Shown in pieces: positions 13,106-36,794 of a stretch of DNA of 64,000 nucleotides. Made by a program: the position numbers and the translations under genes. Within the stretch, counting starts at the first letter, position 1. Every line of letters starts with the position of its first letter. The notes under the pieces were generated by a model. That model made no database searches. It had not been told where the DNA came from and saw only the letters and a program-made list of their open reading frames with translations. The stretch lies in the IMG/VR virus record IMGVR_UViG_3300030329_004647, positions 124,001 through 188,000 of that record; one strand, 5' to 3'.

Positions 13106-13271
13106 TTATAGTTTCTTTTTTAGTGTTTACTGTTATTACGCAAGGTATAGTCTCAATTCGTTCCATAAATTTACCGTAGATTACTTCAAATCTCTCATGT
13201 CTACTTACTAAACTAAAGGGAACCATTGGTTCTCCATGACCATAACTTACCATGTCCCATAATTCATACAT
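13098..13271 (-). CDS. Small hypothetical protein (57 aa, not in ORF track)
   Basis: MYELWDMVSYGHGEPMVPF...KETINE*; ATG overlaps the ugd stop and the end overlaps the phoH start. Confidence 0.55.
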   Translation of the reverse strand: MYELWDMVSYGHGEPMVPFSLVSRHERFEVIYGKFMERIETIPCVITVNTKKETINE

Positions 13272-14149
13272 TATATTTCATTTTTTTCAAGGTTATTAAT
13301 TATTGCTCTACCTTCCATTTTTTCCCAATCCTTGTTAGTCCTAACCATTGTATTAGTGTTATGTGTAGCATCTAACATAGGTGTTTTTATTAAAAGTTTA
13401 TTAGCTTCATGTCTTAACGCTAATAAATCTTTAGGAAAACAATGACCACCAAACCCAAAGTCACCATCTGGCCCAGGAACATTCCAATGTGAGTAACCTA
13501 AACGTTCATCTAATTTAGCATACTCAATTACTTTATCGTAATCAACACCTAACCCTTTACAAACATTATACATTTCATTTGCAAAAGACACTTTAGTAGC
13601 TAAAAAAGTATTAGTTAGATATTTTACCATTTCTGCATATGTAGAATCTGTTTTTACTACATGTACTTTTGGAAAAGCTTTAGAAAAAATAGGTTTAACT
13701 TTAGCGGTAACCTCATTAGGACCACCTAGAATTATTCGGTTTTGATTTTTATAGTCTTCTATTGAATTCGCTTCAGTTAGAAATTCTGGATTATATACTA
13801 AAGATACTCTATTAAATCCTTTTTGTAGTTTTTTAGTAGTTCCAGGGGGTATAGTAGATTTAAGAACAATTGTTCTAGTTTCGTTTCCATAATAATCTTT
13901 AATATCACAATAGTTATTTATTTCACTTAAAACCTCTTCCACAATACCAGTATAACACTTACCCTCATTATCCATAGGTGTTGGTAGACATAAAAAAATT
14001 ATTTTACACCTCTCAACAATATCAACTAGTGTGTTAGTACTAAATTCTGGTTTGTTTAAATCAAAAGTTAATATATTAAAATATTTTTGAAGACCTTCTT
14101 TAACAGCGGTTCCTACAAAACCCTGTCCAACTATTCCTATTTTATCCAT
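13271..14149 (-). CDS. ugd: UDP-glucose/GDP-mannose 6-dehydrogenase family protein (short form)
   Basis: GQGFVG, CLPTP, KSTIPPG, NPEFL, catalytic GFGGHCFPKD; lacks C-terminal UDP-binding domain. Confidence 0.85.
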   Translation of the reverse strand: MDKIGIVGQGFVGTAVKEGLQKYFNILTFDLNKPEFSTNTLVDIVERCKIIFLCLPTPMDNEGKCYTGIVEEVLSEINNYCDIKDYYGNETRTIVLKSTIPPGTTKKLQKGFNRVSLVYNPEFLTEANSIEDYKNQNRIILGGPNEVTAKVKPIFSKAFPKVHVVKTDSTYAEMVKYLTNTFLATKVSFANEMYNVCKGLGVDYDKVIEYAKLDERLGYSHWNVPGPDGDFGFGGHCFPKDLLALRHEANKLLIKTPMLDATHNTNTMVRTNKDWEKMEGRAIINNLEKNEI

Positions 14150-18041: not shown

Positions 18042-19115
18042 TTATTTTTTGTATTTTTCTACGTAATCACTACATAGACCCATAATATTTTTATGTTCTT
18101 TATTATCCCATTCAGGCATTACTTGGATTGAATTACTTGTCAGCTCCTTGCCTGGATATGTCCACATTACCCCTTTAGATGTGAGGGTAACATCATCTTC
18201 TTGGTGCCAAAAACAATGTATATCGTTTTCTAACATTTTATTTAAAGCTATTATATTTTTCGCATGACACCATAACTTTTCATTTTTTAAAAATTCTATT
18301 GGTATTTCGTATTGAGGGTTATCGTGGCCTAAATAAAATTTATCATTTACTACCCATACATCCACCTCAACGTCATACCCTAAGTCCAACGCTTTCTTAA
18401 CATACGATGGAGAATTTTCTAATTTTTCATTCTTACCATTTATATTGCCTCTATGAGAAATTAAAATAGTATCGTTTTTTTCTACCAAACCAAATTCCTC
18501 TAGTATTAAAGGTATTGTTTTTTGGTTTGCGTGAATATGAGCCCCATCCCAGTTATCCAACAAGTCTGGTTTGGTATACCCTTCACTATCTATCATTTTA
18601 TAAAAAATACTATAAAAAGGTATAGAGTTTTTTTCACACATCTCTTTTGCGTAGTCATTAAATTCTTTAGTAACCTCATTTCTCTCTAAACACGTACCAA
18701 AAGAAGGTCCCCCGGTATATTTTTTAGTTGGATGCCAACTTGCAATTGGACCCCAAACAGCTACCTTCATTCCCCAGTTTTTAACTTGTAGAACAGCTTC
18801 AATATATCTATCCACACATTCACGTACTATTTCTTTAACTGTTTTATTTTGTAATTCCATTTGTTTTATAAGATGAGCTCTACAATCTACTTCACCACAA
18901 CAAAACAAAATAGTATCATCAGTAGTTATACCAACCCTATTAATTACATTTTGTATTATTGATAATTTTCTTTCTAGTTGATAGGCTGTTACAGGACCTA
19001 ACCTGTATGTTCTAAACCACGGTAATCTATCGTCTGACCTTCCAGGCCATTCGGGAGTCATTAACTCTACACCCGAAAAAACAGCAGAATGACTGTCCCC
19101 AATACAATGTATCAT
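18042..19115 (-). CDS. Fusion: SGNH-hydrolase-like domain + GDPD/PLC-like phosphodiesterase domain
   Basis: N-terminal IGDSHS, GEVDCR, DGAHIH; C-terminal ISHRGN...YDVEVDVW...LGHD...WCHAKN. Confidence 0.6.
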   Translation of the reverse strand: MIHCIGDSHSAVFSGVELMTPEWPGRSDDRLPWFRTYRLGPVTAYQLERKLSIIQNVINRVGITTDDTILFCCGEVDCRAHLIKQMELQNKTVKEIVRECVDRYIEAVLQVKNWGMKVAVWGPIASWHPTKKYTGGPSFGTCLERNEVTKEFNDYAKEMCEKNSIPFYSIFYKMIDSEGYTKPDLLDNWDGAHIHANQKTIPLILEEFGLVEKNDTILISHRGNINGKNEKLENSPSYVKKALDLGYDVEVDVWVVNDKFYLGHDNPQYEIPIEFLKNEKLWCHAKNIIALNKMLENDIHCFWHQEDDVTLTSKGVMWTYPGKELTSNSIQVMPEWDNKEHKNIMGLCSDYVEKYKK

Positions 19116-20092
19116 ATTTCTAATTTTTTAATTATTTCTTCAAAAAAAAGATTTTCTTTTTCCTGAGAAGATTCGTTACCAATATTCCAAGGATTACCAG
19201 CACCATGTATTGTGTTAAACATGGTATGGATGGAAAAACCATTTTTTACGTATAAAACTTTTAATTTATTATTATTTCTGTAAATGTTTTGTGTTACCTC
19301 ATCATAAGCGTCTCTAATCATTCCTGTTATTTCAGTCCACCTATCAGATTTAATAATAAAAAGATTATTATTAAAATAAGGTTCATCTAATTCTGTAAAA
19401 CTATAAGAATGTTTAGACATTAGTCTATTAAAATTAGTGGTGATATAGTCGTTTAGTAAGAAATGACCCTCCCATGAAATTCTCATAGGATGCATACCCA
19501 TTAGATTAGTCCCTAAGTTTCTAAGAATATCATAGTATTTTTTAGGAGACCATTTAGTAGAATTAATAGTAGCTTCATTTAATGGTTCATAATCGACACC
19601 CCACAAACCTTTAGGTAATGGTCTGTCTAAAAAAATGTTATTTAATTTTTCTTTTATCTTTAAGTCAGTTACGAAGTCTTCTATAAACAAATCTACACAA
19701 GGGATTGTAGTAGACATAGTAGGCATAATCTGCATCACTTCAGAACTTTCTAAAACATTTAAATTTTCTATCATATAATCCCAAACATGACACGGAACAA
19801 ATACGTCTTCATCCCACTTCGCTAAATAAGGTGTATCACAATTTTTAGTTTTATTTATCTTAGACATGTAGTTATGTCCGTTTGGGTGGTAAATTATTTC
19901 ACATTCTATATTTTTAAGATGTGTTTTACTATTTTCTAATTCTGATTTATCGTCTGGATTATCAGCTAGAACAACAACTTTAATTTTATCTTTATTTTCT
20001 TTTTTTATGCCTGATAACATACTAAAAGCTGCTTTGTGAAATTTAGCTCTAGTGTGTGAAAGATAGTATAATGTTAAAAGTTTATTGTTCAT
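19112..20092 (-). CDS. Putative GT-A fold glycosyltransferase
   Basis: YLAKWDEDVF DxD-like motif; in glycan cluster. Confidence 0.5.
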   Translation of the reverse strand: MNNKLLTLYYLSHTRAKFHKAAFSMLSGIKKENKDKIKVVVLADNPDDKSELENSKTHLKNIECEIIYHPNGHNYMSKINKTKNCDTPYLAKWDEDVFVPCHVWDYMIENLNVLESSEVMQIMPTMSTTIPCVDLFIEDFVTDLKIKEKLNNIFLDRPLPKGLWGVDYEPLNEATINSTKWSPKKYYDILRNLGTNLMGMHPMRISWEGHFLLNDYITTNFNRLMSKHSYSFTELDEPYFNNNLFIIKSDRWTEITGMIRDAYDEVTQNIYRNNNKLKVLYVKNGFSIHTMFNTIHGAGNPWNIGNESSQEKENLFFEEIIKKLEI

Positions 20093-20876
20093 TTTTTAAT
20101 ATTTCTTTTTTTATATATGTCTTTAGAGGACAATCTTTTTTGTAATTTACTCTTTTTACTGATACGTAACCCTCATTAAACTTTTCATTAATTTGTTCTT
20201 GTGTAAGAATCCAGTTTTTATTGGGACACGATGGGTCAAAAGTACCAAAAAATGGTGGAAATTTCCACTCCTGACCTGTTAGTAATGCCATAAAACCTGG
20301 GTATAATGAAATCATATCTTGATTCGGATACAACTCAACACACACGTCTATATGCTTTTTACATAGTAACATAGACTCCCTTGTTAAGGTCATGTGTTCC
20401 CAGTTAGAGGCCATAGGTGTAGGAACATTTAATACTTTATGCATATCTTTTTGGTCCCAACGCCCGTAAGGTTGAGTTAACGGGTCTCCTTTAATATCAG
20501 TACTAAAATCTTTACCAGTATAATCAGAGTCCCAGTTAGGTGTGTTATAAAACATCACATAGTTTATATTTTTTTCATAATCAAAAGGCCTTATAAAGTA
20601 TTGATTTGCTGATACTAAACAAAAATGGTCAAAAGAGTTAATCTCTTCTTCTGTAAGACTTTTTACAAGTTCTATAAAAGCACCAAAAATAAAAGATGAA
20701 TGATTAACTGGACCTACATTATGTCTAGTTTTAATCTTAGGATGTTTAACGGTTGGATGATTAACAAAAAAATCACAGTTATCATGTAGAGAACCTATGT
20801 TGTCAACAATATCCTGTATATCATCATAATCATGAACCCCACAATGACCAAAAATTACAAAACCACATCTATTCAT
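20082..20876 (-). CDS. Putative glycosyltransferase (GT14/Core-2-branching-like)
   Basis: FDHFCLVSANQYFIRP resembles GT14-like pattern; C-terminal VKRV. Confidence 0.4.
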   Translation of the reverse strand: MNRCGFVIFGHCGVHDYDDIQDIVDNIGSLHDNCDFFVNHPTVKHPKIKTRHNVGPVNHSSFIFGAFIELVKSLTEEEINSFDHFCLVSANQYFIRPFDYEKNINYVMFYNTPNWDSDYTGKDFSTDIKGDPLTQPYGRWDQKDMHKVLNVPTPMASNWEHMTLTRESMLLCKKHIDVCVELYPNQDMISLYPGFMALLTGQEWKFPPFFGTFDPSCPNKNWILTQEQINEKFNEGYVSVKRVNYKKDCPLKTYIKKEILKNEQ

Positions 20877-20877: not shown

Positions 20878-21213
20878 TTAATTACCTTTATACGCTCTAA
20901 TTGAATTTATTTTATTTTCAGAATCAAATGTGATAATATCCGTCACTAATAATGTGTCAGTTTCATTTATAACTACTTCTATTTCACAAGCAACAGTATT
21001 GTCTTCTTGAAACATTTTACTTGGTCTAACTTCCACAGACTCAACCGCTTCAAAAATTTGTTCATTTGATTTTATAACATTATCTAATCCTTTTGAATTA
21101 ACCTCCCAATCACGTAAATAACAATCTTCTGAAAGAAGTTTTCTTAATCCATCTAAATCTTGATTGGAAAAAGTTTTAAAGTAGGTTAAACATATATTTT
21201 TTAAATTGTCCAT
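20878..21213 (-). CDS. SnoaL/NTF2-like protein
   Basis: YFKTFSNQDLDGLRKLLSEDC...IITFDSENKINSIRAY. Confidence 0.75.
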   Translation of the reverse strand: MDNLKNICLTYFKTFSNQDLDGLRKLLSEDCYLRDWEVNSKGLDNVIKSNEQIFEAVESVEVRPSKMFQEDNTVACEIEVVINETDTLLVTDIITFDSENKINSIRAYKGN

Positions 21214-22193
21214 TCTATTAATTTTTTTATATGAGCTTTAATTTTTTCTTTAATGGTACCTTCCACTTCTCCAAGCTCACTTTTTAATGATAAAAATTTA
21301 TTATCAGATAGTACATAATGACCACATATTTCTACCAAAGTTTTTTTATTATCTTGAGGAATGAAATCTTCATTTACCCACTTTCTCCACCTATTAGATT
21401 CTAGACAAATTTCAAAAAATATTTCTTTTTGTTCTTCGTTCATTAATGAGTATAAAATAGTAGATTCTAACCGACCAAGTTCAGGAGCTATATTAATAGC
21501 GTCTAAACCATTTTGAAATCTAGATTGAAAATCTTTTTGAGATATATAATCCCCGTTATGTTCTTTGGATAGTAAATTAAATTTTTTTACTAAAGTAACC
21601 ATAGATAATAATTTATTCACATCATAAGTTCCTGTATTATGTGTTTCCTTTAATCCTGTTCCTGACTGTATAACACAAAATTTAATTTTAGAAAAAATAT
21701 TATCGGTTAGTTCTTTTTTAACCCTGGTCAACATATATGATATATCATCTAAAGAAAATGGACGTATACCCTCCTCGGTTCCTATCTCAAATAATATATT
21801 AGGATTTTGTTGGTGACAAAATTTAATTAAGTCTATAGTTTTATCTACCCCCTCCTTTATGTCTTTTATTTTTACCCAAGGGTCTATATGTATTAAATCT
21901 AAATATTTACAATCGTGGTTTAAAGAGTTATAACCATCGTCATCTTTATATCCTTGTCCAGGCCCTGCATGGTCCCGTTGCACTTCTATAAGATTAGTTT
22001 TAGATTTAATATAAGACATAAACTTTTCGGTTGTCCAGTTATTAACATAACCGCCGTCAAATTCTACCTGTCTTCTAGAAGGTATGAGTGTTATAATAGT
22101 TTGTAGTTCATTAGCTAATTCTATAGTGGAGTCCACTATATTTTTACTCATAGGTCCTACGTAAAGTTTTGCTGTTGTTGTATTGTTTTCCAT
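21201..22193 (-). CDS. TIM-barrel sugar(-phosphate) epimerase/aldolase-like (GatZ/KbaZ/UxaE-like)
   Basis: SRRQVEFDGGY, RDHAGPG, IHIDP, EIGTEE, KEHNGDY, INIAPELG. Confidence 0.55.
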   Translation of the reverse strand: MENNTTTAKLYVGPMSKNIVDSTIELANELQTIITLIPSRRQVEFDGGYVNNWTTEKFMSYIKSKTNLIEVQRDHAGPGQGYKDDDGYNSLNHDCKYLDLIHIDPWVKIKDIKEGVDKTIDLIKFCHQQNPNILFEIGTEEGIRPFSLDDISYMLTRVKKELTDNIFSKIKFCVIQSGTGLKETHNTGTYDVNKLLSMVTLVKKFNLLSKEHNGDYISQKDFQSRFQNGLDAINIAPELGRLESTILYSLMNEEQKEIFFEICLESNRWRKWVNEDFIPQDNKKTLVEICGHYVLSDNKFLSLKSELGEVEGTIKEKIKAHIKKLIEWTI

Positions 22194-23752
22194 AGATTGT
22201 ATTTTCCAAAGTAGTATAAGAATAAATCAAATGGATGATGATGTAAAGGAGACATGTTTAACCATATTATAGAAGTTAATATTTTTACCTTATCCAGGCT
22301 TAAATTTTTATCTAAAATAAATTGATGTAGTGTTTTTTCACACATAGATAATAAATGTCTACGATTTATATCACAATATATTTTGTCATCACCAATTTCT
22401 ATATTGAATAAATTATCATTAATAATATCATGATTAACAATTAAATTATGATTAAGTTTAGCTAAATCATAATGTATATCCCCTAATTTTAACTCTCCAC
22501 CAAAATCCTGCCTCCAATCTATTAAAGAAAAAGAACCATCCGATTTTTCTATAATATTCTCTAATATAAAATCTCCGTGAAAATAATTAGGTGAATTAAC
22601 ATTAGTTAGAATGTTTTTAACTAGTGATAGTTGGTATTTTACTGGTGGTATATACTCATCATTTATTATTTCTTCTTTATCTACTATATGTTGTTTTTTA
22701 ATTAAAGAATCTAATCGACTAATAGTTTTTTTAATGTAAAAATCTTCACAAATGTCTCTAAATTCATTTACTGATGGATAAATAACATTTTTATCCACAC
22801 CCTTAGACCATAGGTTAATATCAGTCCAGTTTAGTAAATCACTAAAACTTTTAGGTGTGACAGAACGTGAAAATAACTCACCCTCTACTAATTCGTATTT
22901 ATAGAAATTTTTAGTGCTGTCTATAATTTTAGGTACCGAATCCCCAAGAATAGAAGCTCTATCGACTCTTTTTTTAACAATATCTTTATTGTGGAAAAAT
23001 TTTATAACTTTATTATCTAAAATATAAATGGATTCATCTAACTTATCTAAAACATTTATTTCATTATTAATTACTTTTCTTGCTTTATTTAATGAAGATA
23101 CATTTCCTATGTCTTGCCATTTATGACATTCTTCTAAAACAAAACTATTTTTTTTCATCATTTTACTGTAGACATCACAATCAGATATGGAGTCATTAAC
23201 TCTATCCGTGTACACCTCATATAAACAAGACCAAAAATTTACATAGTCATTAATCCCAGCTACACCAACAAATTCATAATCATAGTTAAGTTCTCCTTTT
23301 TCATTAATTCTAGATATCTTAGAACCAGAAACATTTAATGTTCTATATTGAGAACTATTAATTTTTTTATGGCCAACAAGATAGTTTTTATTTGGGGTTA
23401 TATTTTGATAGTCTAAAATAGTATCACAAGCATGAAAAATAAAAGGACATTGTAAGTGATTTTTGGTTTGAAGCATCGAGTAAACCAAACTACTTCCTTT
23501 TCCAGAAAATACGTCAACCCACACAAATTGAAATTTTCTATCTGGGTATGCTAATTCTAAAAATTCTTTAACATGGTCACCAAAATGACCAAGGGTTATA
23601 ACAAACTCTACAGTTTTAGGGTAAGATTCTATTATATAAGATATAGCAGGTTTAGGACCGATTCTTACTAGAGATTTATTGGTAAAATTTGTTATTTCAC
23701 CTAATCTAGACCCCAATCCTGATGTTGTCAGTAATACCTTATACTCTTCCAT
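22157..23752 (-). CDS. Fusion: sugar nucleotidyltransferase + APH/choline-kinase-like domain
   Basis: N-terminal SGLGSRLG...NKSLVRIG.KP, WQDIGN; C-terminal HGDFILENII...LIDWR...YDLAKL. Confidence 0.7.
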   Translation of the reverse strand: MEEYKVLLTTSGLGSRLGEITNFTNKSLVRIGPKPAISYIIESYPKTVEFVITLGHFGDHVKEFLELAYPDRKFQFVWVDVFSGKGSSLVYSMLQTKNHLQCPFIFHACDTILDYQNITPNKNYLVGHKKINSSQYRTLNVSGSKISRINEKGELNYDYEFVGVAGINDYVNFWSCLYEVYTDRVNDSISDCDVYSKMMKKNSFVLEECHKWQDIGNVSSLNKARKVINNEINVLDKLDESIYILDNKVIKFFHNKDIVKKRVDRASILGDSVPKIIDSTKNFYKYELVEGELFSRSVTPKSFSDLLNWTDINLWSKGVDKNVIYPSVNEFRDICEDFYIKKTISRLDSLIKKQHIVDKEEIINDEYIPPVKYQLSLVKNILTNVNSPNYFHGDFILENIIEKSDGSFSLIDWRQDFGGELKLGDIHYDLAKLNHNLIVNHDIINDNLFNIEIGDDKIYCDINRRHLLSMCEKTLHQFILDKNLSLDKVKILTSIIWLNMSPLHHHPFDLFLYYFGKYNLWKTIQQQQNFT

Positions 23753-24086
23753 AATTATCCTCTAATCGTACGATATCGTCCTCCCCAAAATACTCACCCC
23801 ATTGAACCTCAATGAAAATCATATCATTACTACTATTATTAATAGGTCTATGCTTATCACCAACAGGAACTAAAATAGTACTACCGACAGTGACCTCAAT
23901 AACTTCATCATTAAGAATAACTTGTCCCGAACCCTGTACTACTGTCCACACTTCATTTCTTTTGTGGTGATATTGGTAACTTGGGGCACCGCCAGGTTTA
24001 ATAACTATTCTTTTAACTTTACAATAATCACAATCTAATAAATTTTCAAAAGTACCCCACGGTCTTTCTTCATTGTAGTTTTTCAT
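23739..24086 (-). CDS. Mannose-6-phosphate isomerase type II cupin (standalone)
   Basis: ERPWG, KVKRIVIKPG, SYQYHHKRNEVW, IEVQWGEYFGEDDIVRLEDNYGR. Confidence 0.88.
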   Translation of the reverse strand: MKNYNEERPWGTFENLLDCDYCKVKRIVIKPGGAPSYQYHHKRNEVWTVVQGSGQVILNDEVIEVTVGSTILVPVGDKHRPINNSSNDMIFIEVQWGEYFGEDDIVRLEDNYGRV

Positions 24087-24451
24087 ATTTTTAAATCTTT
24101 TATACCTTCAGTATTACGTCTTAAATTAACTGCAAAGGCAGTACCAGTCCTACCATCTTCCTTCATGTCGTTTATCAAATATCTTACTCCACCACCAAAA
24201 CCCATGACTAGTTGGTCATAAATTATTCCAGCTTCTGACAATTGTTGTTCAGTTTGTTTTCTAGCGGTATTTCTTCTACCAGTAGTTAAAACAATATGGT
24301 ATCCCTTTTTTTCCCATTCTAAAAGCTTCTCAATGGTTCCAGGGAGAGGTTCCATTTTAGCATTAGGTTTTGTAGCCTCACTAGGTAACATATGTTTAAC
24401 CAATGTACCATCTATATCACAAAATATTGTTTTAGGTCTATTTTCACTCAT
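24083..24451 (-). CDS. Small HAD-superfamily phosphatase
   Basis: FCDIDGTL, LTTGR, INDMK. Confidence 0.8.
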   Translation of the reverse strand: MSENRPKTIFCDIDGTLVKHMLPSEATKPNAKMEPLPGTIEKLLEWEKKGYHIVLTTGRRNTARKQTEQQLSEAGIIYDQLVMGFGGGVRYLINDMKEDGRTGTAFAVNLRRNTEGIKDLKI

Positions 24452-24452: not shown

Positions 24453-25808
24453 TTATAATTTTTTTGAAATTTTATTTATAACAGTGTCTATGTAATCGAA
24501 TACTTCTTCAGTGTAGTGTGGAGAAGCCCCAACAAAAAACACTCTATCTAAAACAATATTTGCTTTAGGGTAGTCTTTATAATCACCTAGGTGTTTATAT
24601 CCAGGGTGTAGAAGTATATTACCAGCAAAGTAATTTCTAGTCTGTATTTTATTATCTTCTAACTCCTTCACAATTATTCTTTTTTGTTCAGCACTTTCAC
24701 AAATAAAAGGAGTACCGAACCAAGAGGTTTCGGCTTTTTCTAATTCTATAGGAACCCTTAATGAAGGAATATTTTTTTGAAAAATTTCGGTTATTCTATT
24801 TTTACTAATAATTCTACGTTCATGTATTTCATCAAATTTATCTAGTTGAACTAGACCTATAGCTCCTTGCATGTCTAAAGGTTTTAGATTATAACCCACA
24901 TTAGTGAATACGTATTTATGGTCAACAATTCCATCGTAATCTTCTAACCAAGGACTAAATCTTTTTCCACAAGTACCACAACCCAGAAGATTAGCTGAAC
25001 CTACACAATAACAATCTCTCCCCCACCAAGCAAAACTTCTAGCTAACTCTATAATTTTTGGATTTGCTGACGAAACCATCCCGCCTTCACCAGTGGTAAT
25101 GTGGTGAGCTGGATAAAATGAACATGATGAAGCGATAGAGTAGTCTGTAAGGTACTTACCGTCCCACTTACTACCCAGACTATCGCAATTATCCATAATT
25201 AATTGTATGTTATGTTTTTTAGCTATTTCATTTAACTTATCAAAATCTGGTGAGTTACCTAGTACAGGAGATATGAATATAGCTTTAGTTTTTTCGGTCA
25301 CTAAATCTTCTATTAAATCCACATCAAAGTTAAGAGTGTCTAATTCTATATCTACAAAAATAGGTGTTAAATTATTTTGTACTAAAGGAGCTAGAGTAGT
25401 CGGAAATCCTACCACTGAAATTAAAACCTCATCACCATCATTCCAACCAAAGTATTTTTTAAGAGCGGCTATTAATACAAGATTTGCAGAACTTCCAGAA
25501 TTAACCATAGTAGATTTTTGAAAATTAAAAATTCTAGAAAACATCGTTTCAAATCTATGTACGTTTGCACCTGTTGCTAACCACTTACCATATAAAAAAG
25601 CTTCCATAGCTGCAACCACTTCCCGTGTGTTCCAGTACGGTCCAGAATAGTATATAGGGGTTTTTCCTGGTTCAAATTTTTGATTTACATTATAGGCATA
25701 TTTTAAAATAGGATTTTCTTCATTTAACTCAGCTACAATCTCCTCTATATGTTCTACTTTATTTTTCTTTTTAGTAAGTCCTAATATTTTTTTAAGTTTT
25801 TTTATCAT
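24453..25808 (-). CDS. rfbH: NDP-4-keto-6-deoxyglucose 3-dehydratase (RfbH/DdhC E1-like)
   Basis: VNSGSSANL, DNCDSLGS, SFYPAHHITTGEGG, WGRDCYC...CGTCGKRF Fe-S motif, DHKYVF, TRNYFAGN. Confidence 0.85.
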   Translation of the reverse strand: MIKKLKKILGLTKKKNKVEHIEEIVAELNEENPILKYAYNVNQKFEPGKTPIYYSGPYWNTREVVAAMEAFLYGKWLATGANVHRFETMFSRIFNFQKSTMVNSGSSANLVLIAALKKYFGWNDGDEVLISVVGFPTTLAPLVQNNLTPIFVDIELDTLNFDVDLIEDLVTEKTKAIFISPVLGNSPDFDKLNEIAKKHNIQLIMDNCDSLGSKWDGKYLTDYSIASSCSFYPAHHITTGEGGMVSSANPKIIELARSFAWWGRDCYCVGSANLLGCGTCGKRFSPWLEDYDGIVDHKYVFTNVGYNLKPLDMQGAIGLVQLDKFDEIHERRIISKNRITEIFQKNIPSLRVPIELEKAETSWFGTPFICESAEQKRIIVKELEDNKIQTRNYFAGNILLHPGYKHLGDYKDYPKANIVLDRVFFVGASPHYTEEVFDYIDTVINKISKKL

Positions 25809-25820
25809 TCCTTTTAATTT

Positions 25821-26549
25821 TTATTTATTTATACAATCTTTATATCTTTCTAACGGTAACGCATTTTCTTTTTCTATATCTGCCCAAGAAAAGAAATTAA
25901 AATGTTTATGTTTTTCATCCATCCCAATCCAAAACTCAGCTTGATGTCTGTAGTCAAGTATAAAATTTTCTGGATTGATAATCCAGTCAATCGTAGGTAG
26001 TTTTGAAAGATATTCAGCATTTGCCCACCATATATTTCCAGAGTAGTGAGGCACATAGTCTTCGTATCCATCCCTCATATCTTTATTCCAGTTAGCACCA
26101 CAACTATCGTGGGTTTCTAATTTTTCTATACACTTTAAAAAGTTTTCTATTGAAAAATAAAAATGCATATTTCTTCTATCCATCATTTTTGGGTCATTCC
26201 AGTTCCAAGTGGACACGGATAAAGTTTGTGTGTATAAAACCTTATAATCTTTATTATTATCTACAAAATCTCTAAGTAATCTTAGGGTTGGCAATTCATA
26301 GTCTAATAAATTACCCACTCTAGTTATTTTATAGTTGTCAAAATTAAGTAAATGTTCTGGAAAGGGTAGGTCCCCAACAACATTAAAATGTACATAATCT
26401 ATGTAGTCAAATAAGCCAGATTTATTACCTTTTTCGACTATATCTTTAATTATTCTTTCATAAGTCGTGTTATATGCATGATTATTACCAATTACTGGAG
26501 TTGCAACATGCATAAACATAACCGCTTTATTATTCTTCATATTTATCAT
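25821..26549 (-). CDS. Glycosyltransferase-like hypothetical protein
   Basis: YELPTL, HYSGNIWWANAEY, RHQAEFWIG; type often seen in viral glycan clusters. Confidence 0.4.
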   Translation of the reverse strand: MINMKNNKAVMFMHVATPVIGNNHAYNTTYERIIKDIVEKGNKSGLFDYIDYVHFNVVGDLPFPEHLLNFDNYKITRVGNLLDYELPTLRLLRDFVDNNKDYKVLYTQTLSVSTWNWNDPKMMDRRNMHFYFSIENFLKCIEKLETHDSCGANWNKDMRDGYEDYVPHYSGNIWWANAEYLSKLPTIDWIINPENFILDYRHQAEFWIGMDEKHKHFNFFSWADIEKENALPLERYKDCINK

Positions 26550-26850
26550 TTTTTACACAAGGTGTTTTTACCACAACTGTGGTAACATGAGTTAAACATT
26601 TAAAGTCCGTACTTTCACCTGGTTTTATTACTATTATATCATCCGCCGAATATTCCACCCCATTCATCTCGACCACACCATCAACTATTACAGTAAATTC
26701 CGTAGCCACCTTATGAGTGTGTCTTTTTTCTACAGCACCCTCTAAATACCTTTTAACTGCCACCTCAAAGTCTTGAGTTTTATAAAGGCTAGGTTCAAAG
26801 TCACCCACAAACCAACCCTTAATCATTTCATTTAAATTATGTTTTTCCAT
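26530..26850 (-). CDS. Cupin-fold protein
   Basis: GWFVGDFEPS, HTHKVATEFTVIVDG, VVKTP...DKY. Confidence 0.75.
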   Translation of the reverse strand: MEKHNLNEMIKGWFVGDFEPSLYKTQDFEVAVKRYLEGAVEKRHTHKVATEFTVIVDGVVEMNGVEYSADDIIVIKPGESTDFKCLTHVTTVVVKTPCVKNDKYEE

Positions 26851-28217
26851 TAGTATTTATGATTTTCTAAAAATTTATTTAAATCTTCTGGTGTTCCTAA
26901 TCCCCACATTTTTTTAGTGTGAAACGTCTTTATTTTTTTACCATCCTCTATAGCTTCATTATATATTGGACAAACATAAAATTCATTGTTTATTCTTAAG
27001 TCTTTTTCAATCATTTGTTCACCATATCTTACATAATCAGAACCCTTTGACCAATAGTATATACCCACCGTAGCGATATTACTTATTGGCTTTTTTTCTG
27101 CAACTTCAGATACATACCCATCATTATCTAGTTTAGCAAAACTCCATTTTGGATGAGTTGCGGTAAAAGATAAAATACCACCATCAATTTCATCTGCCAT
27201 CATAGAGTACATAAACTCATTAGAATCCCACTCCACAAACTGGTCAGAGTTTGCTATTAATAAAGGTTCATCATTATTTATAAATTCTTTAGCTAATAAA
27301 GTTGTACATGCTGCACCTTCTGTTACCCCATCAACCTGAACTATTTCACAACCAGGTGTAATAAGGTTTAGTAAGTGTTTTAAGTTATACTTTTCATAGT
27401 GTGATTTTTGAACAATGTATATGTGACGTGCATCAATATTTAAATTTTCAGTCACTACTTGAATCATAGGTTTATTATTAACTTCTATCAGTGGTTTAGG
27501 GAAAGTATACCCAGCTTTTTCAAATCTAGAACCTGCTCCTGCCATAGGGATTAAAACATTCATTTTTCCACCTTGCCACTTAGGTATAATAGCACCGTTA
27601 TTATGTTTGTCTAAATGTTCATTAATTTTTTCGTATGTAACATCTTCACAGTCTTTAACCGCACATAAATGACCTCCACTTTCTACCGCTCCCTTTCTAC
27701 CGTGATGAGAATCCTCAATAATAAGAGTTTGTTTTGGTGACACACCAAAATGTAACATACATTTCATGTACATTTCAGGATGTGGTTTAGGTTTAATAAC
27801 ATCTTGATTCGTGTATAGAACATCTATGTGTTCCATAAACCCTTTTCTAATTAGTTGTAATTTTGCTGTTTCTCTAATTGAATTAGTACAACAAGCTATC
27901 TGATATCCTGAATCTTTTAATCTTCTTAGAATGTCTTTAATTCTAAAATCTTGTGAAAATTTATCTATAATAGATACGGTTTTTTCTTGTTTAAGTTTCC
28001 ATACTATGTTATGAACATCCTTTGATAGTCCTTTTGAGGATGTTAACATTTCTAATTTTTTTGTGGTAGATAACCCATCATATGTAGATAGGTGTTCATC
28101 TCTGGAAATGATAAACTTTTCATCTATGGTTTCTAAAGCTTTATTTAAAGCTTCGTAATGTAATTCTCTAGCGTTTACTAAAACACCATCTAAGTCAAAT
28201 ATAATTAATTTAATCAT
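26850..28217 (-). CDS. Fusion: HAD phosphatase + nucleotidyltransferase
   Basis: FDLDGVL, KPHPEMY, IEDS; then IPMAGAGSRF...PKPLIEV, NSDQ, AEKKPIS, GLGTPEDL. Confidence 0.8.
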   Translation of the reverse strand: MIKLIIFDLDGVLVNARELHYEALNKALETIDEKFIISRDEHLSTYDGLSTTKKLEMLTSSKGLSKDVHNIVWKLKQEKTVSIIDKFSQDFRIKDILRRLKDSGYQIACCTNSIRETAKLQLIRKGFMEHIDVLYTNQDVIKPKPHPEMYMKCMLHFGVSPKQTLIIEDSHHGRKGAVESGGHLCAVKDCEDVTYEKINEHLDKHNNGAIIPKWQGGKMNVLIPMAGAGSRFEKAGYTFPKPLIEVNNKPMIQVVTENLNIDARHIYIVQKSHYEKYNLKHLLNLITPGCEIVQVDGVTEGAACTTLLAKEFINNDEPLLIANSDQFVEWDSNEFMYSMMADEIDGGILSFTATHPKWSFAKLDNDGYVSEVAEKKPISNIATVGIYYWSKGSDYVRYGEQMIEKDLRINNEFYVCPIYNEAIEDGKKIKTFHTKKMWGLGTPEDLNKFLENHKY

Positions 28218-28279: not shown

Positions 28280-29197
28280 TTAAATGTTTTGAATGATGTT
28301 CTCAAACAAGTTAATAAGATAATCTAAGTTAATAACATTAGACTGTTTATTGCTAACTATTGGTTCCTTAAAATAACTTTGATATAGCTTATCGTCAGAG
28401 TCTATTTCTAATATTTTTTCTATTAATTCTTCATCACTTTCAAAATCAAAATAATTTAAAAAGCTATTAGGGTTATATTCTTCGTGTATCCTATCATTTC
28501 CCCAGTAAATCGGGATAACACCAGATATAAATGGTTCTATAAATTTTTCACTAATCATACCATTCATACTTACCATTTCTCCATTCTCAATTACCGCGTT
28601 AGGGTAAGAAGGATATGTAGCTCTAAAGTTATTCTCAAAAGCAATATTAAATTTATAATCTTTTATAAAATTTATTTTTGGTAAGGAGGAGTTTAAAGAA
28701 GTATTATCAAAAGGAATGGAAAAGTCTTTGAATGGGTGAACATTAGTTTCTACTTTTTTTACATTATTTAATTTATGAAAAAAACGACCTCTTTTACCGT
28801 GTAAACTTCTACTTACATAAGAACAAAATTTTGTTTTTGGTGGTATAGGTCTATTTTCTTGGGTAAAAAAACTAAAATCCTTTATTAATCCATTTTTTAT
28901 AAATTCATAAACATATTGATAGTAGGCTGGAAATCTTGTGTAATTAGGATAATCTAAAAAAAATCCACCTAAAAAATGGTCAGCAATTTCTGGTGTGGGT
29001 ACTGGAAAATAAGGTTCCCCACCATTAAAATAAATGGTATACACATCAGGAAATGGTCGGTCATTTAAAGAAATTACTAAATTAGGGTTTGAGTCGACCA
29101 CAGTAACATTATGATTTTGACTTAATATCCACACAAAAAAATTATCCTGCTTATTAAAACCACCCCAAAATTCATGAAAATATAATCTAATATCCAT
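28280..29197 (-). CDS. GT10 alpha-1,3/4-fucosyltransferase-like
   Basis: KTKFCSYV, KINFIKDYKFNIAFEN, ISEKF, IPIYWG. Confidence 0.82.
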   Translation of the reverse strand: MDIRLYFHEFWGGFNKQDNFFVWILSQNHNVTVVDSNPNLVISLNDRPFPDVYTIYFNGGEPYFPVPTPEIADHFLGGFFLDYPNYTRFPAYYQYVYEFIKNGLIKDFSFFTQENRPIPPKTKFCSYVSRSLHGKRGRFFHKLNNVKKVETNVHPFKDFSIPFDNTSLNSSLPKINFIKDYKFNIAFENNFRATYPSYPNAVIENGEMVSMNGMISEKFIEPFISGVIPIYWGNDRIHEEYNPNSFLNYFDFESDEELIEKILEIDSDDKLYQSYFKEPIVSNKQSNVINLDYLINLFENIIQNI

Positions 29198-29198
29198 T

Positions 29199-29927
29199 TT
29201 ATTTATCTGTATTTTCTTTAGTAGTTCTAAGGTCTATTTCATATGCGGTACAATCTATATTTTCTTGTCTAGTTAATCTAGGAACAATAGCATAACAAGT
29301 TTCATTTTTTTGTTTAACTACTTCACTAAAAGCTCCGTCTGCTGTGTAATATCCTTCTTTATTAAATTCAGCCATTGTTTTAGCAAAGGATTTTGTTATA
29401 CCAATACTGTGAGTACAGTGTAAGTGAATAAAATTATCTTTTGTTACTTTACATATATTAGAAGAGTGGTTTGGTTGCGGATACATATTTCCGTCCCACC
29501 CTAGGTATACCATGCCCCAGTCATTAGGAAGTTGTGACATGTAATCTTCTACATTTTCAAATTCTGGAAAAAAGATACAATCGTCCTCCAATATTAATAC
29601 CTTCTCCCAATCACCATTAGCTATTTTTTCATACATTTTAACATGGGACAAAGAACATCCTATTTGTCCAAAAGATAGATTTTGTGGCATTACCCTAACT
29701 ATACCATTCGTGTCTGTATGTAAATTAGTAAAACCAGCTTTAGAACCATCTATACCATAAAACAACTCATAATCTAATCCATCCAACCTATCTTTTATTC
29801 TTTGTATTCTTGATTTAGCAGTTGGTGCTAAATTAGCATTAGCCACAAAATCAGATTCATTAAAATCATGTTCTAGTGTTAACACTAAAACTTTATCGAA
29901 TAATTTATTTAATATACTTAAATCCAT
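29199..29927 (-). CDS. GT25 glycosyltransferase
   Basis: GIDG, GQIGCSLSH, LILEDD, DWGMVYLG. Confidence 0.82.
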   Translation of the reverse strand: MDLSILNKLFDKVLVLTLEHDFNESDFVANANLAPTAKSRIQRIKDRLDGLDYELFYGIDGSKAGFTNLHTDTNGIVRVMPQNLSFGQIGCSLSHVKMYEKIANGDWEKVLILEDDCIFFPEFENVEDYMSQLPNDWGMVYLGWDGNMYPQPNHSSNICKVTKDNFIHLHCTHSIGITKSFAKTMAEFNKEGYYTADGAFSEVVKQKNETCYAIVPRLTRQENIDCTAYEIDLRTTKENTDK

Positions 29928-30595
29928 GTTTTTATATAGTTTTTAGTTTCATCACTCATTTCATTAAAAGCTCTATCTTTAAATTTTAAAAGTGAAACTG
30001 AGGATTCAGGGTTCATATAGAATGTGTATTTTTCCCTAACTTGTTTGGACCAAACAACATCTTCGGATTCTCCCCACATTCTATTTTCATCTAAAGGAAA
30101 TTCTTTCATTATATGTTTTTTACATACCCAGTAAGCTCCTGAAATATACATCCACTTAGTAAACTCAGTAAAGTCATAAGGAAGAAGAAATTCTTTATTT
30201 TTCACACCTAAAGGTTCCACATCAAAAGCCCATAAAGTCCAATCTCTATATCGACTACCATCTCTATTTAAAATTTTAGTCATACAAACATCAAAATCGT
30301 TTCCAAATTTTAAAAAGCCATCATACCAATTCTTAGATAAAAATACATAATCGTGTAAGTAAACAATGTTATCAAACTTAGCTTCATTAGTGATGATATT
30401 CTTTTTTTTAGTAATCCACATTGGTCTTTGAGTCTCATCAAATGGAATAACCCGAGTATTTTCCGCTTTAACATTACTATTACCAACTACAATAATTTCA
30501 AAATTAGGGATATTTTGTGATAATATAGAATTTATAACTATTTCTACAAAATCATCCGAAGAACCGTTTGTTATTATTCCAAAAGTAAAATCCAT
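29918..30595 (-). CDS. GT2-like glycosyltransferase
   Basis: FTFGIIT, KKKN, VYLHDY, WGESEDVVWS. Confidence 0.65.
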   Translation of the reverse strand: MDFTFGIITNGSSDDFVEIVINSILSQNIPNFEIIVVGNSNVKAENTRVIPFDETQRPMWITKKKNIITNEAKFDNIVYLHDYVFLSKNWYDGFLKFGNDFDVCMTKILNRDGSRYRDWTLWAFDVEPLGVKNKEFLLPYDFTEFTKWMYISGAYWVCKKHIMKEFPLDENRMWGESEDVVWSKQVREKYTFYMNPESSVSLLKFKDRAFNEMSDETKNYIKTWI

Positions 30596-30597
30596 AA

Positions 30598-31410
30598 TTA
30601 AAAGTAGTTTGTGTAGTTTTTAAAAATCCAATCTTCAGCGAGAATAAATTCCTTTGATTTATCTAAATTATTCTTAATAGCTTCCATTCTATTAATATAA
30701 TCTTCTTCTGTTAAATTATCTAAAATATTTTTTAACTCTTCCACAGTTTCAAAAAATATTATTCCATTTTCGTCAAAAAAGTTTTTAACAGAGTGGGTTC
30801 CCCAATATATTGGTATGGTTCCAGTAGCGAAACAATCTATTATTTTTTCCGTAAAATAATCATCATACTTTATATTTTCTACTACTACTGAAAATCTGTA
30901 TTTAGACAACCCATCTATTTTGAACTCTAAATCATTAATTCCTCTTCCATAAACATCTATATTATTACCCATTTCTTTAATAATAGAATGCCTTAATTTG
31001 TGACCAGTAGTTGTTTGTTTATTTGAAGCTATGATAGAACATAGAGAAGACTTAGGCCATATTTTTATATCTTTATCGTCAATCCAACACCCAGCGTGAG
31101 GATACCATTTAAATTTTTCAGGGTCACTTTCTATTAGTTCTTGGGAATAGGTAAATATTACATCATATCTATCTTTGACAGTTTTAACCGACTCATACCC
31201 TCTTGGATTTATAGATGGAGGTTCTATCAACCAACCTATATTTTTTTTGTATGGTGAACTTAATACGTGTGTAATTAAGTAGTCAGTAAAAAAACAAATT
31301 TCGGATTCATAATCTTCCCTAATCCACTCAAAGTAAGAGGGTTTTCTTCCATGACAAGAAGATTCACCATGAGCGAAACACATGTCTTTTATTAGTATTT
31401 TTTTATTCAT
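30598..31410 (-). CDS. GT10-like glycosyltransferase
   Basis: YRFSVVVEN, YFTEKIIDCFATGTIPIYWG. Confidence 0.75.
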   Translation of the reverse strand: MNKKILIKDMCFAHGESSCHGRKPSYFEWIREDYESEICFFTDYLITHVLSSPYKKNIGWLIEPPSINPRGYESVKTVKDRYDVIFTYSQELIESDPEKFKWYPHAGCWIDDKDIKIWPKSSLCSIIASNKQTTTGHKLRHSIIKEMGNNIDVYGRGINDLEFKIDGLSKYRFSVVVENIKYDDYFTEKIIDCFATGTIPIYWGTHSVKNFFDENGIIFFETVEELKNILDNLTEEDYINRMEAIKNNLDKSKEFILAEDWIFKNYTNYF

Positions 31411-32204
31411 TTTAAAATAAATTTAATTTCTTGATGAGGACCATTAACGTCAGTAAAATCCATATTAACAAAATCTAGTCTTTTTCCATTAATATATTCC
31501 CTCACTAATTCTTTTTCACTGTAACTTATTTTTTTACCATAAGGATTGTTAAAAACGTCGTTAACTTTATTAACAGGAATACTAACCAACTTACTCTCTT
31601 CGAATGAATGCATAAATCTTTCACCAATTATAGGTAAAAAATGCTGTAAATTAGCTTCTAGTGTGTTGGGTGATGTAAAGGGACACCTTTCTAATATTTT
31701 TAGTATAAATTCTTTTTTAAATATATGGCCATCAACAGATAGTGGATAGGCAAAATCAACTTCATTTTCATCCCATCTCCATTTTAAAACACCATTGTTA
31801 TTACTTACATTTTTAGTTTCATAACTTTTAGAAGCGGGATGAGAATAGTTACAATTTAATCCTAGTCTTAGGGAAAAACAGGCTGCGTCATCATCTATAT
31901 TAATTTTATTAAACTGAAGTGTTTTAAAAATAACACTATCATCTGTCATGAAAGAAAATAACTTAAATTTTTGTTTTCTAACAAACGATAATACTTGATT
32001 GTAAAAATCCTCTTCTTCTATATTAAAATTAACATCTGGATGTTCTTTTATGAGTGTCTTGTACGCGGATTCATAATGAGGTGCTGTTGTTTTATATATA
32101 ATATTTATGTTAAAAAAATTGGGCATATTAAGATATATAGAGTTTAACAACCCATCTAATTGTAATGGTCTATTTTTAGAAAATATAACTAATTCACACC
32201 TCAT
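31407..32204 (-). CDS. GT-A-like putative glycosyltransferase
   Basis: IFSKNRPLQL, FMTDD, FSLRLG, YPLSVDGHIF. Confidence 0.5.
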   Translation of the reverse strand: MRCELVIFSKNRPLQLDGLLNSIYLNMPNFFNINIIYKTTAPHYESAYKTLIKEHPDVNFNIEEEDFYNQVLSFVRKQKFKLFSFMTDDSVIFKTLQFNKINIDDDAACFSLRLGLNCNYSHPASKSYETKNVSNNNGVLKWRWDENEVDFAYPLSVDGHIFKKEFILKILERCPFTSPNTLEANLQHFLPIIGERFMHSFEESKLVSIPVNKVNDVFNNPYGKKISYSEKELVREYINGKRLDFVNMDFTDVNGPHQEIKFILK

Positions 32205-36786: not shown

Positions 36787-36794
36787 TTTTATTT

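What the first reader, a model, noticed from the sequence alone, without database searches (positions are those of the whole stretch)
20878..24451. Uncharacterised sugar-activation cassette: HAD, PMI cupin, NTase-kinase fusion, GatZ-like TIM barrel, SnoaL
Seen: five coupled genes followed by two GT-like ORFs (20082, 19112). Known: GatZ/UxaE-family barrels epimerise ketose (phosphate)s. Inference: epimerise, phosphorylate, dephosphorylate and nucleotidylate steps for an unusual NDP-ketose or polyol donor, which I cannot match to a described pathway.
Basis: inference. Interest (0 to 1): 0.6.

Follow-up and report, generated by a model that had tools for sequence, protein, structure and literature searches.

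The report
Conserved phage cassette for a rare nucleotide-sugar
A marine giant phage carries a tightly packed set of five genes, shared with hundreds of other viruses and bacteria, that most likely turns a common sugar phosphate into an activated rare sugar by an undescribed route, so it marks a widespread pathway that can now be tested.

Summary
Five overlapping minus-strand genes at 20878-24451 encode a 122-aa HAD phosphatase, a PMI-type cupin, a LicC-like nucleotidyltransferase fused to an APH/LicA-fold kinase, a distant GatZ-family TIM barrel and a SnoaL-like protein. They lie in a roughly 22-kb sugar-gene stretch of a marine T4-like jumbo phage.

The cassette is conserved. Cupin, fusion protein, barrel and small HAD co-occur in 70-78 of 82 viral loci. 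The fusion protein is found in at least 264 prokaryote species and 216 viral contigs. Natural barrel-SnoaL and fusion-HAD proteins exist.

The barrel keeps the GatZ catalytic residues. In many bacteria the barrel and cupin are replaced by a HxlB-like isomerase and an RPE-like epimerase. That swap recurs at least 7-8 times on the fusion-protein tree.

Best reading: epimerise and isomerise a ketose phosphate, phosphorylate C1, remove the distal phosphate, then nucleotidylate. This is NDP-heptose logic built from unrelated folds.

Its identity (talose, or altrose/allose type) is unresolved. I found no published description.

The parts
24083..24451 (-). Minimal capless HAD phosphatase (122 aa); proposed to remove the distal (omega) phosphate
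   Evidence: HAD Pfam and NCBIfam hits. D12, D14, T57 and D95 are conserved in at least 95% of 68 homologues. Present in 70 of 82 viral loci with the cassette. Cellular cassettes carry a KdsC-like HAD instead, sometimes fused to the NTase-kinase.
23739..24086 (-). Stand-alone type II PMI-like cupin (115 aa); proposed ketose-phosphate to aldose-phosphate isomerase
   Evidence: PF01050 at 92.5 bits and TIGR01479 C-terminal part. H40, E45 and H79 are conserved in at least 95% of 92 homologues. Adjacent to the fusion gene in 73 of 82 viral loci.
22157..23752 (-). Bifunctional protein: N-terminal LicC/RmlA-fold nucleotidyltransferase (about residues 1-235) and C-terminal APH/LicA-fold kinase (about residues 240-531)
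   Evidence: Model pLDDT 89.7. Foldseek and VIA matches to 4ecm, 1jyk, MurU and IPCT for residues 1-246. LicA 4r77 Z 15.7 and APHs for the C-terminal part. Invariant G12, G14, K26, D110, K251, H392-G393-D394, N399 and D412.
21201..22193 (-). Short (330 aa) divergent GatZ/KbaZ-family TIM barrel; proposed Zn-dependent ketose-phosphate epimerase
   Evidence: Model pLDDT 94. Best structural matches are GatZ 2fiq and 3txv at TM 0.77-0.80, then class II aldolases and UxaE. Invariant D74, H75, E140 and H212 align with GatZ D87, H88, E171 and H257 (PMC11907403). Adjacent to the fusion gene in 78 of 82 viral loci.
20878..21213 (-). SnoaL/NTF2-like accessory protein (111 aa), partner of the TIM barrel
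   Evidence: SnoaL_2 at 35.3 bits. Natural barrel-SnoaL fusions P0018, P0063 and P0109, 35-44% identical to this ORF. Present in only 10 of 82 viral loci.
19112..20876 (-). Two soluble GT-A-like ORFs (264 and 326 aa); candidate transferases for the product
   Evidence: No Pfam hit. Atlas structure neighbours are GT2, Branch and GT6 clusters. They follow the cassette in the same order in related phage contigs L092, L098, L103-L106 and L118.

Best explanation
The five genes are a self-contained pathway that makes a nucleotide-activated rare aldose from a central ketose phosphate. It moves the phosphate with a kinase and a phosphatase instead of a mutase.

Proposed order:
1. The GatZ-like metal TIM barrel, helped in some genomes by the SnoaL-like protein, epimerises a ketose omega-phosphate such as fructose-6-P.
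2. The PMI-like cupin isomerises the new ketose phosphate to the aldose phosphate.
3. The APH-fold kinase domain phosphorylates the anomeric hydroxyl.
4. The small HAD removes the distal phosphate.
5. The LicC-like domain of the same polypeptide couples the sugar-1-P to an NTP.

The soluble GT-A-like enzymes downstream would then use the product. Steps 3 and 4 could run in the opposite order.

What is shown: the folds, the conserved catalytic residues, the conserved neighbourhood, the fusions and the module swapping. What is inferred: the substrates, the order of steps, the nucleotide and the sugar. The candidates are D-talose if the barrel is a C4 epimerase like GatZ, D-altrose or D-allose if it acts at C3 like the RPE-type enzyme that replaces it, or the heptose analogues.
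For: Conserved core:
- Cupin, fusion protein and barrel are adjacent in 78 of 80 viral loci.
- By protein clustering: fusion protein 82, barrel 78, cupin 73 and small HAD 70 of 82 loci.

Natural fusions:
- NTase-kinase fused to a KdsC-like HAD: P0129, P0135, P0177.
- Barrel fused to SnoaL: P0018, P0063, P0109.

Catalytic residues are conserved in all four core enzymes. The GatZ tetrad aligns with invariant barrel residues (GatZ residues and its F6P/T6P 4-epimerase activity from PMC11907403).

Module replacement:
- Many cellular cassettes replace barrel and cupin with a HxlB-like SIS isomerase (TIGR03127, 187 bits against a cut-off of 160) and an RPE-family epimerase. That is again one epimerase plus one isomerase.
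- The two cassette types are interleaved on the fusion-protein tree. Well-supported branches force at least 7-8 changes.

Logic and precedent:
- A kinase, a phosphatase and an NTase in one biosynthetic unit is the logic of the NDP-heptose pathway (GmhA, HldE or HddA, GmhB, HddC; from my own knowledge).
- APH-fold anomeric sugar kinases paired with NTases are known, for example AmgK/MurU (from my own knowledge). MurU 4y7t matches at Z 22.8.
Against: - No enzyme of this cassette has been assayed, and no substrate is shown.
- The best structural matches of both fusion-protein domains include LicC and LicA, which activate a non-sugar alcohol.
- The barrel is only distantly GatZ-like: no Pfam hit, hhalign probability 11%. 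Two GatZ substrate-contact positions differ (E44 to I37, K279 to N234), so its regiochemistry is open.
- If the barrel acts at C4 and the RPE-like enzyme at C3, the two swapped modules would give different sugars. That fits poorly with their free exchange on the tree.
- HxlB-like enzymes normally move a carbonyl between C2 and C3, not C1 and C2.
Confidence: 0.55

Rival explanations
1. LicCA-like phospho-alcohol donor. The HAD releases a free sugar or polyol. The kinase phosphorylates a non-anomeric hydroxyl and the NTase makes a CDP-linked compound. That compound donates a sugar-phosphate or polyol-phosphate, as CDP-choline, CDP-glycerol, CDP-ribitol and CDP-6-fructose do.
For: LicC (1jyk, TM 0.83, Z 24.8), IPCT and PntC are among the best NTase matches. 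LicA (4r77, Z 15.7) is the best kinase-domain match. Some databases name homologues 'choline kinase'.
Against: - No LicD-type or CDP-alcohol phosphotransferase and no reductase were found among the ORFs scanned in the stretch.
- The conserved downstream partners look like GT-A glycosyltransferases.
- A PMI-type isomerase is near-universal in the viral cassette, and a polyol or ketose route would not need one.
- Sugar-1-P NTases (4ecm, GalU, MurU, HddC) match as well as LicC does.
- Similarity to LicC is marginal by sequence (E 0.002). LicA gives no sequence match at all.
Confidence: 0.2
2. Mutase-independent GDP-mannose supply. The cupin makes mannose-6-P from F6P. The kinase and HAD convert it to mannose-1-P and the NTase makes GDP-mannose. 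This would feed the GDP-mannose 4,6-dehydratase, the GDP-fucose-synthase-like gene and the GT10 genes in the same stretch.
For: The cupin belongs to the PMI domain family of bifunctional GMP/PMI enzymes. The stretch holds a GMD (403 bits), a GFS-like SDR and two GT10-like genes, but no ManB or ManC was seen. A GMD-like gene lies within 8 kb of the cassette in 26 of 81 viral loci.
Against: - The epimerase-type barrel is present in 78 of 82 viral loci and has no role in a mannose route.
- The alternative cellular cassette has no PMI at all.
- A GMD is nearby in only 32% of viral and 12% of cellular loci.
- Methyltransferases are the most frequent accessory genes.
Confidence: 0.1
3. Salvage module only. 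The fusion protein recycles a free sugar (kinase then NTase, as in AmgK/MurU or FKP). The neighbouring HAD, cupin and barrel belong to other pathways and are merely adjacent in a sugar-gene-rich region.
For: Kinase-NTase pairs and fusions are typical salvage enzymes (from my own knowledge). The flanking genes vary between loci.
Against: The core four genes keep their adjacency across phages, CPR bacteria, Proteobacteria, Campylobacterota and DPANN archaea. Covalent fusion-HAD and barrel-SnoaL proteins exist. The front-end module is always replaced as a pair.
Confidence: 0.07

Closest known systems
NDP-heptose pathway (GmhA; HldE or HddA; GmhB; HldE or HddC)
   Same: Same logic: ketose-phosphate isomerase, anomeric kinase, HAD phosphatase for the distal phosphate, then nucleotidyltransferase. 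As in HldE, the kinase and the NTase (two non-consecutive steps) sit on one polypeptide. HddC 6jq8 matches the NTase domain at Z 21.1.
   Different: Different folds: a cupin instead of a SIS isomerase in the phage, an APH fold instead of a ribokinase or GHMP kinase, a capless 122-aa HAD instead of GmhB. There is also an extra epimerase step, the GatZ-like barrel. No sequence membership in any heptose enzyme family.
AmgK/MurU (UDP-MurNAc salvage) and NahK-type APH-fold anomeric sugar kinases
   Same: An APH-fold kinase that phosphorylates C1 of a sugar, followed by an RmlA/LicC-fold NTase. MurU 4y7t matches at Z 22.8.
   Different: Those are separate proteins in a salvage route. Here the two domains are fused and embedded in a de novo route with an epimerase, an isomerase and a phosphatase. 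The kinase domain has no sequence match to any solved structure.
LicA/LicC (CDP-choline) and the LicCA fusion of spirochaetes
   Same: Same two folds in the same N-to-C order. LicC and LicA are among the best structural matches.
   Different: Only marginal sequence similarity. No LicB or LicD partners. Obligate association with sugar-phosphate enzymes.
GatZ/KbaZ fructose-6-P/tagatose-6-P 4-epimerase with a HAD sugar phosphatase (tagatose route, PMC11907403)
   Same: Best structural match of the barrel. The catalytic Asp, His, Glu and His residues are conserved. It is paired with a HAD phosphatase.
   Different: The barrel is about 90 residues shorter and scores below Pfam and NCBIfam thresholds. 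Two substrate-contact positions differ. It sits in an anabolic cassette that ends in a nucleotide sugar, not a free ketose.
Type II PMI domain of bifunctional GMP/PMI enzymes (AlgA, ManC, WbpW)
   Same: PF01050 match over the whole protein, with the metal-binding His, Glu and His conserved.
   Different: It is a stand-alone 115-aa protein. Its NTase partner is LicC-like, not ManC-like, and its likely substrate is an epimerised ketose phosphate rather than F6P.

Membership tests
GatZ/KbaZ family (PF08013, TIGR02810) | Profile score above the curated cut-off | tested here: not met
   No Pfam or NCBIfam hit for the window protein. Homologues reach 20-23.5 bits against a cut-off of 26.7. A few homologues carry a precomputed PF08013 hit.
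GatZ/KbaZ family (PF08013, TIGR02810) | GatZ-type TIM-barrel fold | tested here: met
   Foldseek top hits are 3txv and 2fiq, E 5e-14 to 2e-12, TM 0.77-0.80. They rank ahead of class II aldolases at TM about 0.5.
GatZ/KbaZ family (PF08013, TIGR02810) | Catalytic Asp plus the His, Glu, His metal site (GatZ D87, H88, E171, H257; PMC11907403) | tested here: met
   These align with D74, H75, E140 and H212. All four are invariant in 45 homologues. The hhalign probability is low (11%), but the alignment is anchored by shared motifs.
GatZ/KbaZ family (PF08013, TIGR02810) | F6P/T6P C4-epimerase activity | not testable with these tools
   Needs an enzyme assay. GatZ E44 and K279 are replaced by I37 and N234.
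Type II PMI cupin (PF01050) | Profile score above cut-off and conserved metal ligands | tested here: met
   92.5 bits against a cut-off of 23.6. H40, E45 and H79 are conserved in at least 95% of 92 homologues.
HAD superfamily phosphatase | Motif I DxD nucleophile and acid, motif II Thr or Ser, motif IV acidic residue | tested here: met
   D12, D14, T57 and D95 are conserved in at least 95% of 68 homologues. PF03767, PF25109, PF24694 and PF08282 score above cut-off. No cap domain fits in 122 aa.
LicA/LicC phosphocholine pathway | LicC-fold cytidylyltransferase and choline-kinase-fold kinase | tested here: met
   1jyk Z 24.8, 4r77 Z 15.7. Fold level only.
LicA/LicC phosphocholine pathway | Sequence membership in the LicC and LicA families | tested here: not met
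   LicC E 0.002 over 126 residues. A profile of the kinase domain finds no kinase in the PDB. No choline-kinase Pfam hit.
LicA/LicC phosphocholine pathway | Companion LicB transporter and LicD phosphocholine transferase | tested here: not met
   Neither was found among the ORFs scanned between about 8.9 and 41 kb. No polytopic membrane protein between 8.5 and 36.8 kb.
NDP-heptose pathway enzymes (GmhA, HldE/HddA, GmhB, HddC) | Homology to the pathway's enzyme families | tested here: not met
   No GmhA, HldE, HddA or GmhB model hit for the window proteins. The only link is a weak HddC-type match of a homologue's NTase domain (E 2e-4).
NDP-heptose pathway enzymes (GmhA, HldE/HddA, GmhB, HddC) | Pathway logic: isomerase, anomeric kinase, distal phosphatase, NTase | tested here: inconclusive
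   All four enzyme types are present, conserved and partly fused. The position phosphorylated and the phosphate removed are not known.

The most novel reading that the evidence does not exclude
This is a previously undescribed, very widespread nucleotide-sugar pathway for a rare aldose, such as D-talose or D-altrose/D-allose, often methylated. It has two evolutionarily interchangeable front ends: GatZ-like barrel plus PMI cupin, or RPE-like plus HxlB-like enzymes. Marine jumbo phages use it, together with only soluble glycosyltransferases, to glycosylate their own virion or another cytoplasmic target rather than an exported polysaccharide.
Probability: 0.4. Interest if true: 0.75.

Novelty: new variant of a known kind. 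Interest (0 to 1): 0.62.

Why it matters
If the reading is right, thousands of metagenomic genes now labelled 'hypothetical', 'choline kinase' or 'NDP-sugar pyrophosphorylase' belong to one pathway. They occur in CPR bacteria, DPANN archaea, SAR11 and SAR86, Bacteroidota, Campylobacterota, phages and possibly giant viruses.

That pathway would add a new monosaccharide donor to the microbial glycan repertoire. It would also be a second natural case, after NDP-heptose, of phosphate relocation by a kinase and a phosphatase instead of a mutase.

The repeated exchange of a GatZ-like/cupin pair for an RPE/HxlB pair is a clean natural experiment in non-orthologous displacement. It directly constrains what each enzyme can do.

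For phage biology, a roughly 22-kb sugar-gene stretch without any membrane step points to large-scale cytoplasmic glycosylation by a marine jumbo phage. The GatZ-like and HAD enzymes are also of practical interest for rare-sugar production.

Tried and rejected
- **Nucleotide similarity to cultured phages:** none. A protein search of the fusion protein against phage and plasmid records found only one uncultured marine virus and weak partial hits. No cultured phage with a known glycan can be used.
- **Sequence searches of the PDB:** nothing for the barrel or for a kinase-domain profile. Only structure comparison placed them.
- **Literature:** seven full-text searches. None found a description of the cassette. 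The library lacks most subscription journals, so this is not proof of absence.
- **Complex prediction on barrel plus SnoaL:** no verdict, score 0.00. Not evidence either way.
- **GDP-mannose supply reading:** considered and ranked low (see rivals).
- **tblastn at 1e-5 on cellular loci:** at first this suggested the barrel and cupin were in only about 30% of loci. Clustering and family scans showed the rest carry the alternative HxlB/RPE module.
- **Sugar identity:** I tried to deduce it from stereochemical bookkeeping of the two modules. Only a C3-epimerase reading makes them equivalent (altrose/allose type). The GatZ precedent points to C4 (talose type). This stays unresolved.
Full report
**Context**

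The window is bases 124001-188000 of a 232-kb IMG/VR virus record that CheckV estimates as 72% complete. It encodes:
- a 1361-aa tail sheath,
- a family B DNA polymerase,
- PhoH,
- an SNF2 helicase,
- a sigma-factor-like protein and a dUTPase.

The sheath is most similar to those of T4-like aquatic phages of Microcystis, Flavobacterium, Pelagibacter and Synechococcus. The finding's stretch occurs nearly identically in marine and seawater metagenomes from at least 13 studies. So this is a recurrent marine jumbo myophage of about 30% G+C.

**The observation**

Between PhoH (12371-13105) and the dUTPase (35453-36088), one minus-strand run of tightly packed genes is devoted to sugar chemistry. It contains:
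- a GDP-mannose 4,6-dehydratase and other SDRs,
- two DegT-type enzymes, one of them RfbH-like,
- a HAD-NTase fusion,
- GT10-, GT25-, GT2- and GT4-type transferases.

The five genes of the finding sit in the middle of this run, at exactly the stated coordinates. They overlap each other by 4, 14, 37 and 13 nt.

Family scans confirm the HAD, the PMI-type cupin and the SnoaL-like protein. The 531-aa protein and the 330-aa protein are nearly blank by Pfam, so I folded both with alignments of homologues.

- **The 330-aa protein** (pLDDT 94) is a TIM barrel. Its best matches are the GatZ-family structures 2fiq and 3txv at TM 0.77-0.80. Class II aldolases and UxaE follow.
- **The 531-aa protein** (pLDDT 89.7) has two domains.
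  - The N-terminal domain is a nucleotidyltransferase: 4ecm Z 25.3, LicC 1jyk Z 24.8, MurU Z 22.8, and also IPCT, PntC and HddC.
  - The C-terminal domain has an APH/choline-kinase fold: LicA 4r77 Z 15.7, and APH(4)-Ia.
  - The kinase motifs are invariant among 40 homologues. These are a beta-3 Lys, HGDxxxxN and a downstream Asp. The NTase glycine-rich loop, Lys and Asp are invariant too.

**Is it a unit?**

Both open proteins have thousands of homologues, mostly unnamed metagenomic proteins. A scan of one genome per species found the fusion protein in at least 264 species:
- many Patescibacteria,
- Bdellovibrionales and Bacteroidota,
- Gamma- and Alphaproteobacteria, including SAR86, Pelagibacteraceae and a cultured Marinomonas,
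- Arcobacter and Wolinella,
- Melainabacteria and Chlamydiales,
- DPANN archaea.

IMG/VR holds at least 216 viral contigs with it. In the 80 best viral loci, cupin, fusion protein and barrel are adjacent in 78. Protein clustering over 82 loci gives:

| Gene | Loci out of 82 |
|---|---|
| Fusion protein | 82 |
| TIM barrel | 78 |
| Cupin | 73 |
| Small HAD | 70 |
| SnoaL | 10 |

Two kinds of natural fusion tie the parts together.
- NTase-kinase-HAD proteins of about 700 aa.
- Barrel-SnoaL proteins of about 437 aa, whose C-terminal part is 35-44% identical to the window's SnoaL ORF.

The core is thus four genes, and SnoaL is an accessory of the barrel. Frequent further accessories are a TylF-like O-methyltransferase, often inserted between the fusion gene and the barrel, and a 375-aa methyltransferase with a C-methyltransferase-type C-terminal domain. 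Neither is present in this window.

**The informative variant**

In most cellular loci the barrel and the cupin are missing. In their place, directly upstream of the fusion gene, stand two other enzymes:
- a 184-aa SIS protein that passes NCBI's cut-off for 6-phospho-3-hexuloisomerase HxlB (187 bits against 160),
- a ribulose-phosphate 3-epimerase family protein (217.5 bits against 212.6).

A KdsC-like HAD follows the fusion gene. So one epimerase plus one isomerase of sugar phosphates is replaced by another such pair.

On a maximum-likelihood tree of 119 fusion proteins, the two cassette types are interleaved. Well-supported branches force at least 7-8 changes, and some lie within tight clades of Patescibacteria or Proteobacteria. 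This repeated exchange on a nearly constant kinase-NTase background argues that the two front ends deliver the same sugar phosphate, or a very similar one.

**Mechanism**

The barrel keeps the residues that a recent study assigns to catalysis in GatZ. That study shows GatZ and KbaZ to be fructose-6-P/tagatose-6-P 4-epimerases working by a Zn-dependent retro-aldol/aldol mechanism (PMC11907403).
- GatZ Asp87, His88, Glu171 and His257 align with D74, H75, E140 and H212.
- All four are invariant in 45 homologues.
- Two GatZ substrate-contact residues differ: E44 aligns with I37, and K279 with the invariant N234.

The cupin keeps its metal His, Glu and His residues. The HAD keeps its DxD, Thr and Asp residues.

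A biosynthetic unit that contains a kinase, a phosphatase and a nucleotidyltransferase is most simply a phosphate-relocation pathway. The textbook case is NDP-heptose synthesis, where HldE likewise joins the kinase and the NTase on one chain around the GmhB phosphatase step (from my own knowledge).

I therefore propose this order:
1. ketose phosphate to epimer (barrel, with or without SnoaL),
2. to aldose phosphate (cupin),
3. to aldose 1,omega-bisphosphate (kinase domain),
4. to aldose-1-P (HAD),
5. to NDP-aldose (NTase domain).

The soluble GT-A-like proteins encoded next would then use the product. They follow the cassette in the same order in a group of related large phage contigs.

**Which sugar?**

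This is not resolved.
- If the barrel is a C4 epimerase like GatZ and the cupin gives the manno-type C2 configuration, F6P would lead to D-talose.
- If the two front ends are truly equivalent, the barrel should act at C3, like the RPE-type enzyme. The product would then be of the D-altrose or D-allose type.
- Heptose analogues from sedoheptulose-7-P are equally possible.

All of this is inference from stereochemistry. The nucleotide is unknown as well.

**Rivals**

- **A LicCA-like CDP-alcohol donor.** LicC and LicA are among the best structural matches. But I found no LicD-type or CDP-alcohol transferase, no reductase and no membrane protein. Sugar-1-P NTases match equally well. The near-universal PMI-type isomerase would be unnecessary.
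- **A mutase-free GDP-mannose supply for the neighbouring GMD.** This is attractive locally. It does not explain the ever-present barrel, the PMI-less variant, or the modest co-occurrence with GMD (26 of 81 viral loci, 10 of 82 cellular loci).
- **A pure salvage role for the fusion protein.** This is contradicted by the conserved adjacency and the fusions.

**Comparison and novelty**

Every fold here is known, and so is the overall logic. The combination is not described in anything I could search. That library omits most subscription journals.

I file it as a new variant of a known kind: a nucleotide-sugar pathway of the NDP-heptose type, built from unrelated enzyme families, with an added epimerase and an exchangeable front end.

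It is right about the cassette and its general purpose. It should be amended in three ways:
- add the isomerase step,
- prefer an aldose over a ketose or polyol,
- treat SnoaL as optional.

Noticed in passing
window 13271-35449 (minus strand): The whole sugar-gene stretch (about 22 kb, more than 20 genes) has no predicted polytopic membrane protein and no flippase, polymerase or initiating phosphoglycosyltransferase hit. This suggests cytoplasmic glycosylation of a soluble target, such as virion proteins, or reliance on host export.
   Followed up: partly
window 24453-28217 (minus strand): A second uncharacterised activation module lies directly upstream. It holds a HAD_2 (beta-phosphoglucomutase-like)-NTP_transferase fusion (26850-28217), a 106-aa cupin (26530-26850), a 242-aa ORF with no Pfam hit (25821-26549) and an RfbH-like PLP enzyme (24453-25808; 367.6 bits, below the cut-off of 423). 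The HAD-NTase fusion recurs in 18 of 82 viral loci that carry the cassette.
   Followed up: partly
L011:6728-10100 and about 45 other cellular loci (L007-L075): An alternative cassette carries an HxlB-like 6-phospho-3-hexuloisomerase and an RPE-family epimerase in place of the barrel and cupin, plus a KdsC-like HAD. It is common in Patescibacteria, Bdellovibrionales and Bacteroidota. One viral contig (L164) has it too.
   Followed up: yes
window 56856-60941 (+): The tail sheath protein is unusually long at 1361 aa. Only its C-terminal part matches the sheath domain. The best partial matches are an uncultured 484-kb phage and phages of Microcystis, Flavobacterium, Pelagibacter and Synechococcus.
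   Followed up: partly
window 13271-14149 (-): A UDP-glucose/GDP-mannose dehydrogenase-like ORF of only 292 aa. The match starts at position 67 of the NAD-binding domain profile, and no C-terminal domain is hit. It may be truncated or degenerate.
   Followed up: no
window 36088-36825 (-) and 45212-47932 (+): A separate 245-aa PolB-type 3'-5' exonuclease-like ORF lies about 8 kb from the 906-aa family B polymerase gene.
   Followed up: no
window 28280-34464 (-): Paired GT10 (fucosyltransferase-like) and GT25 ORFs alternate with ORFs that have no Pfam hit. There is also a 550-aa protein with both a GT2-like and a GT4 domain.
   Followed up: no
L163 (IMGVR GVMAG-S-1035079-49) and UniRef A0A6C0KE16 (P0022): The cassette also appears on a contig binned as a giant-virus MAG, and the barrel appears in a 'viral metagenome' UniRef entry. 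Atlas neighbours of the 326-aa GT-like ORF include a Nucleocytoviricota cluster. This could be real or a binning artefact.
   Followed up: no
window 8924-9625 and 38997-39389 (-): A sigma-70 region-2-like ORF (E 2e-4, below cut-off) and a WYL-domain ORF flank the sugar-gene stretch.
   Followed up: no
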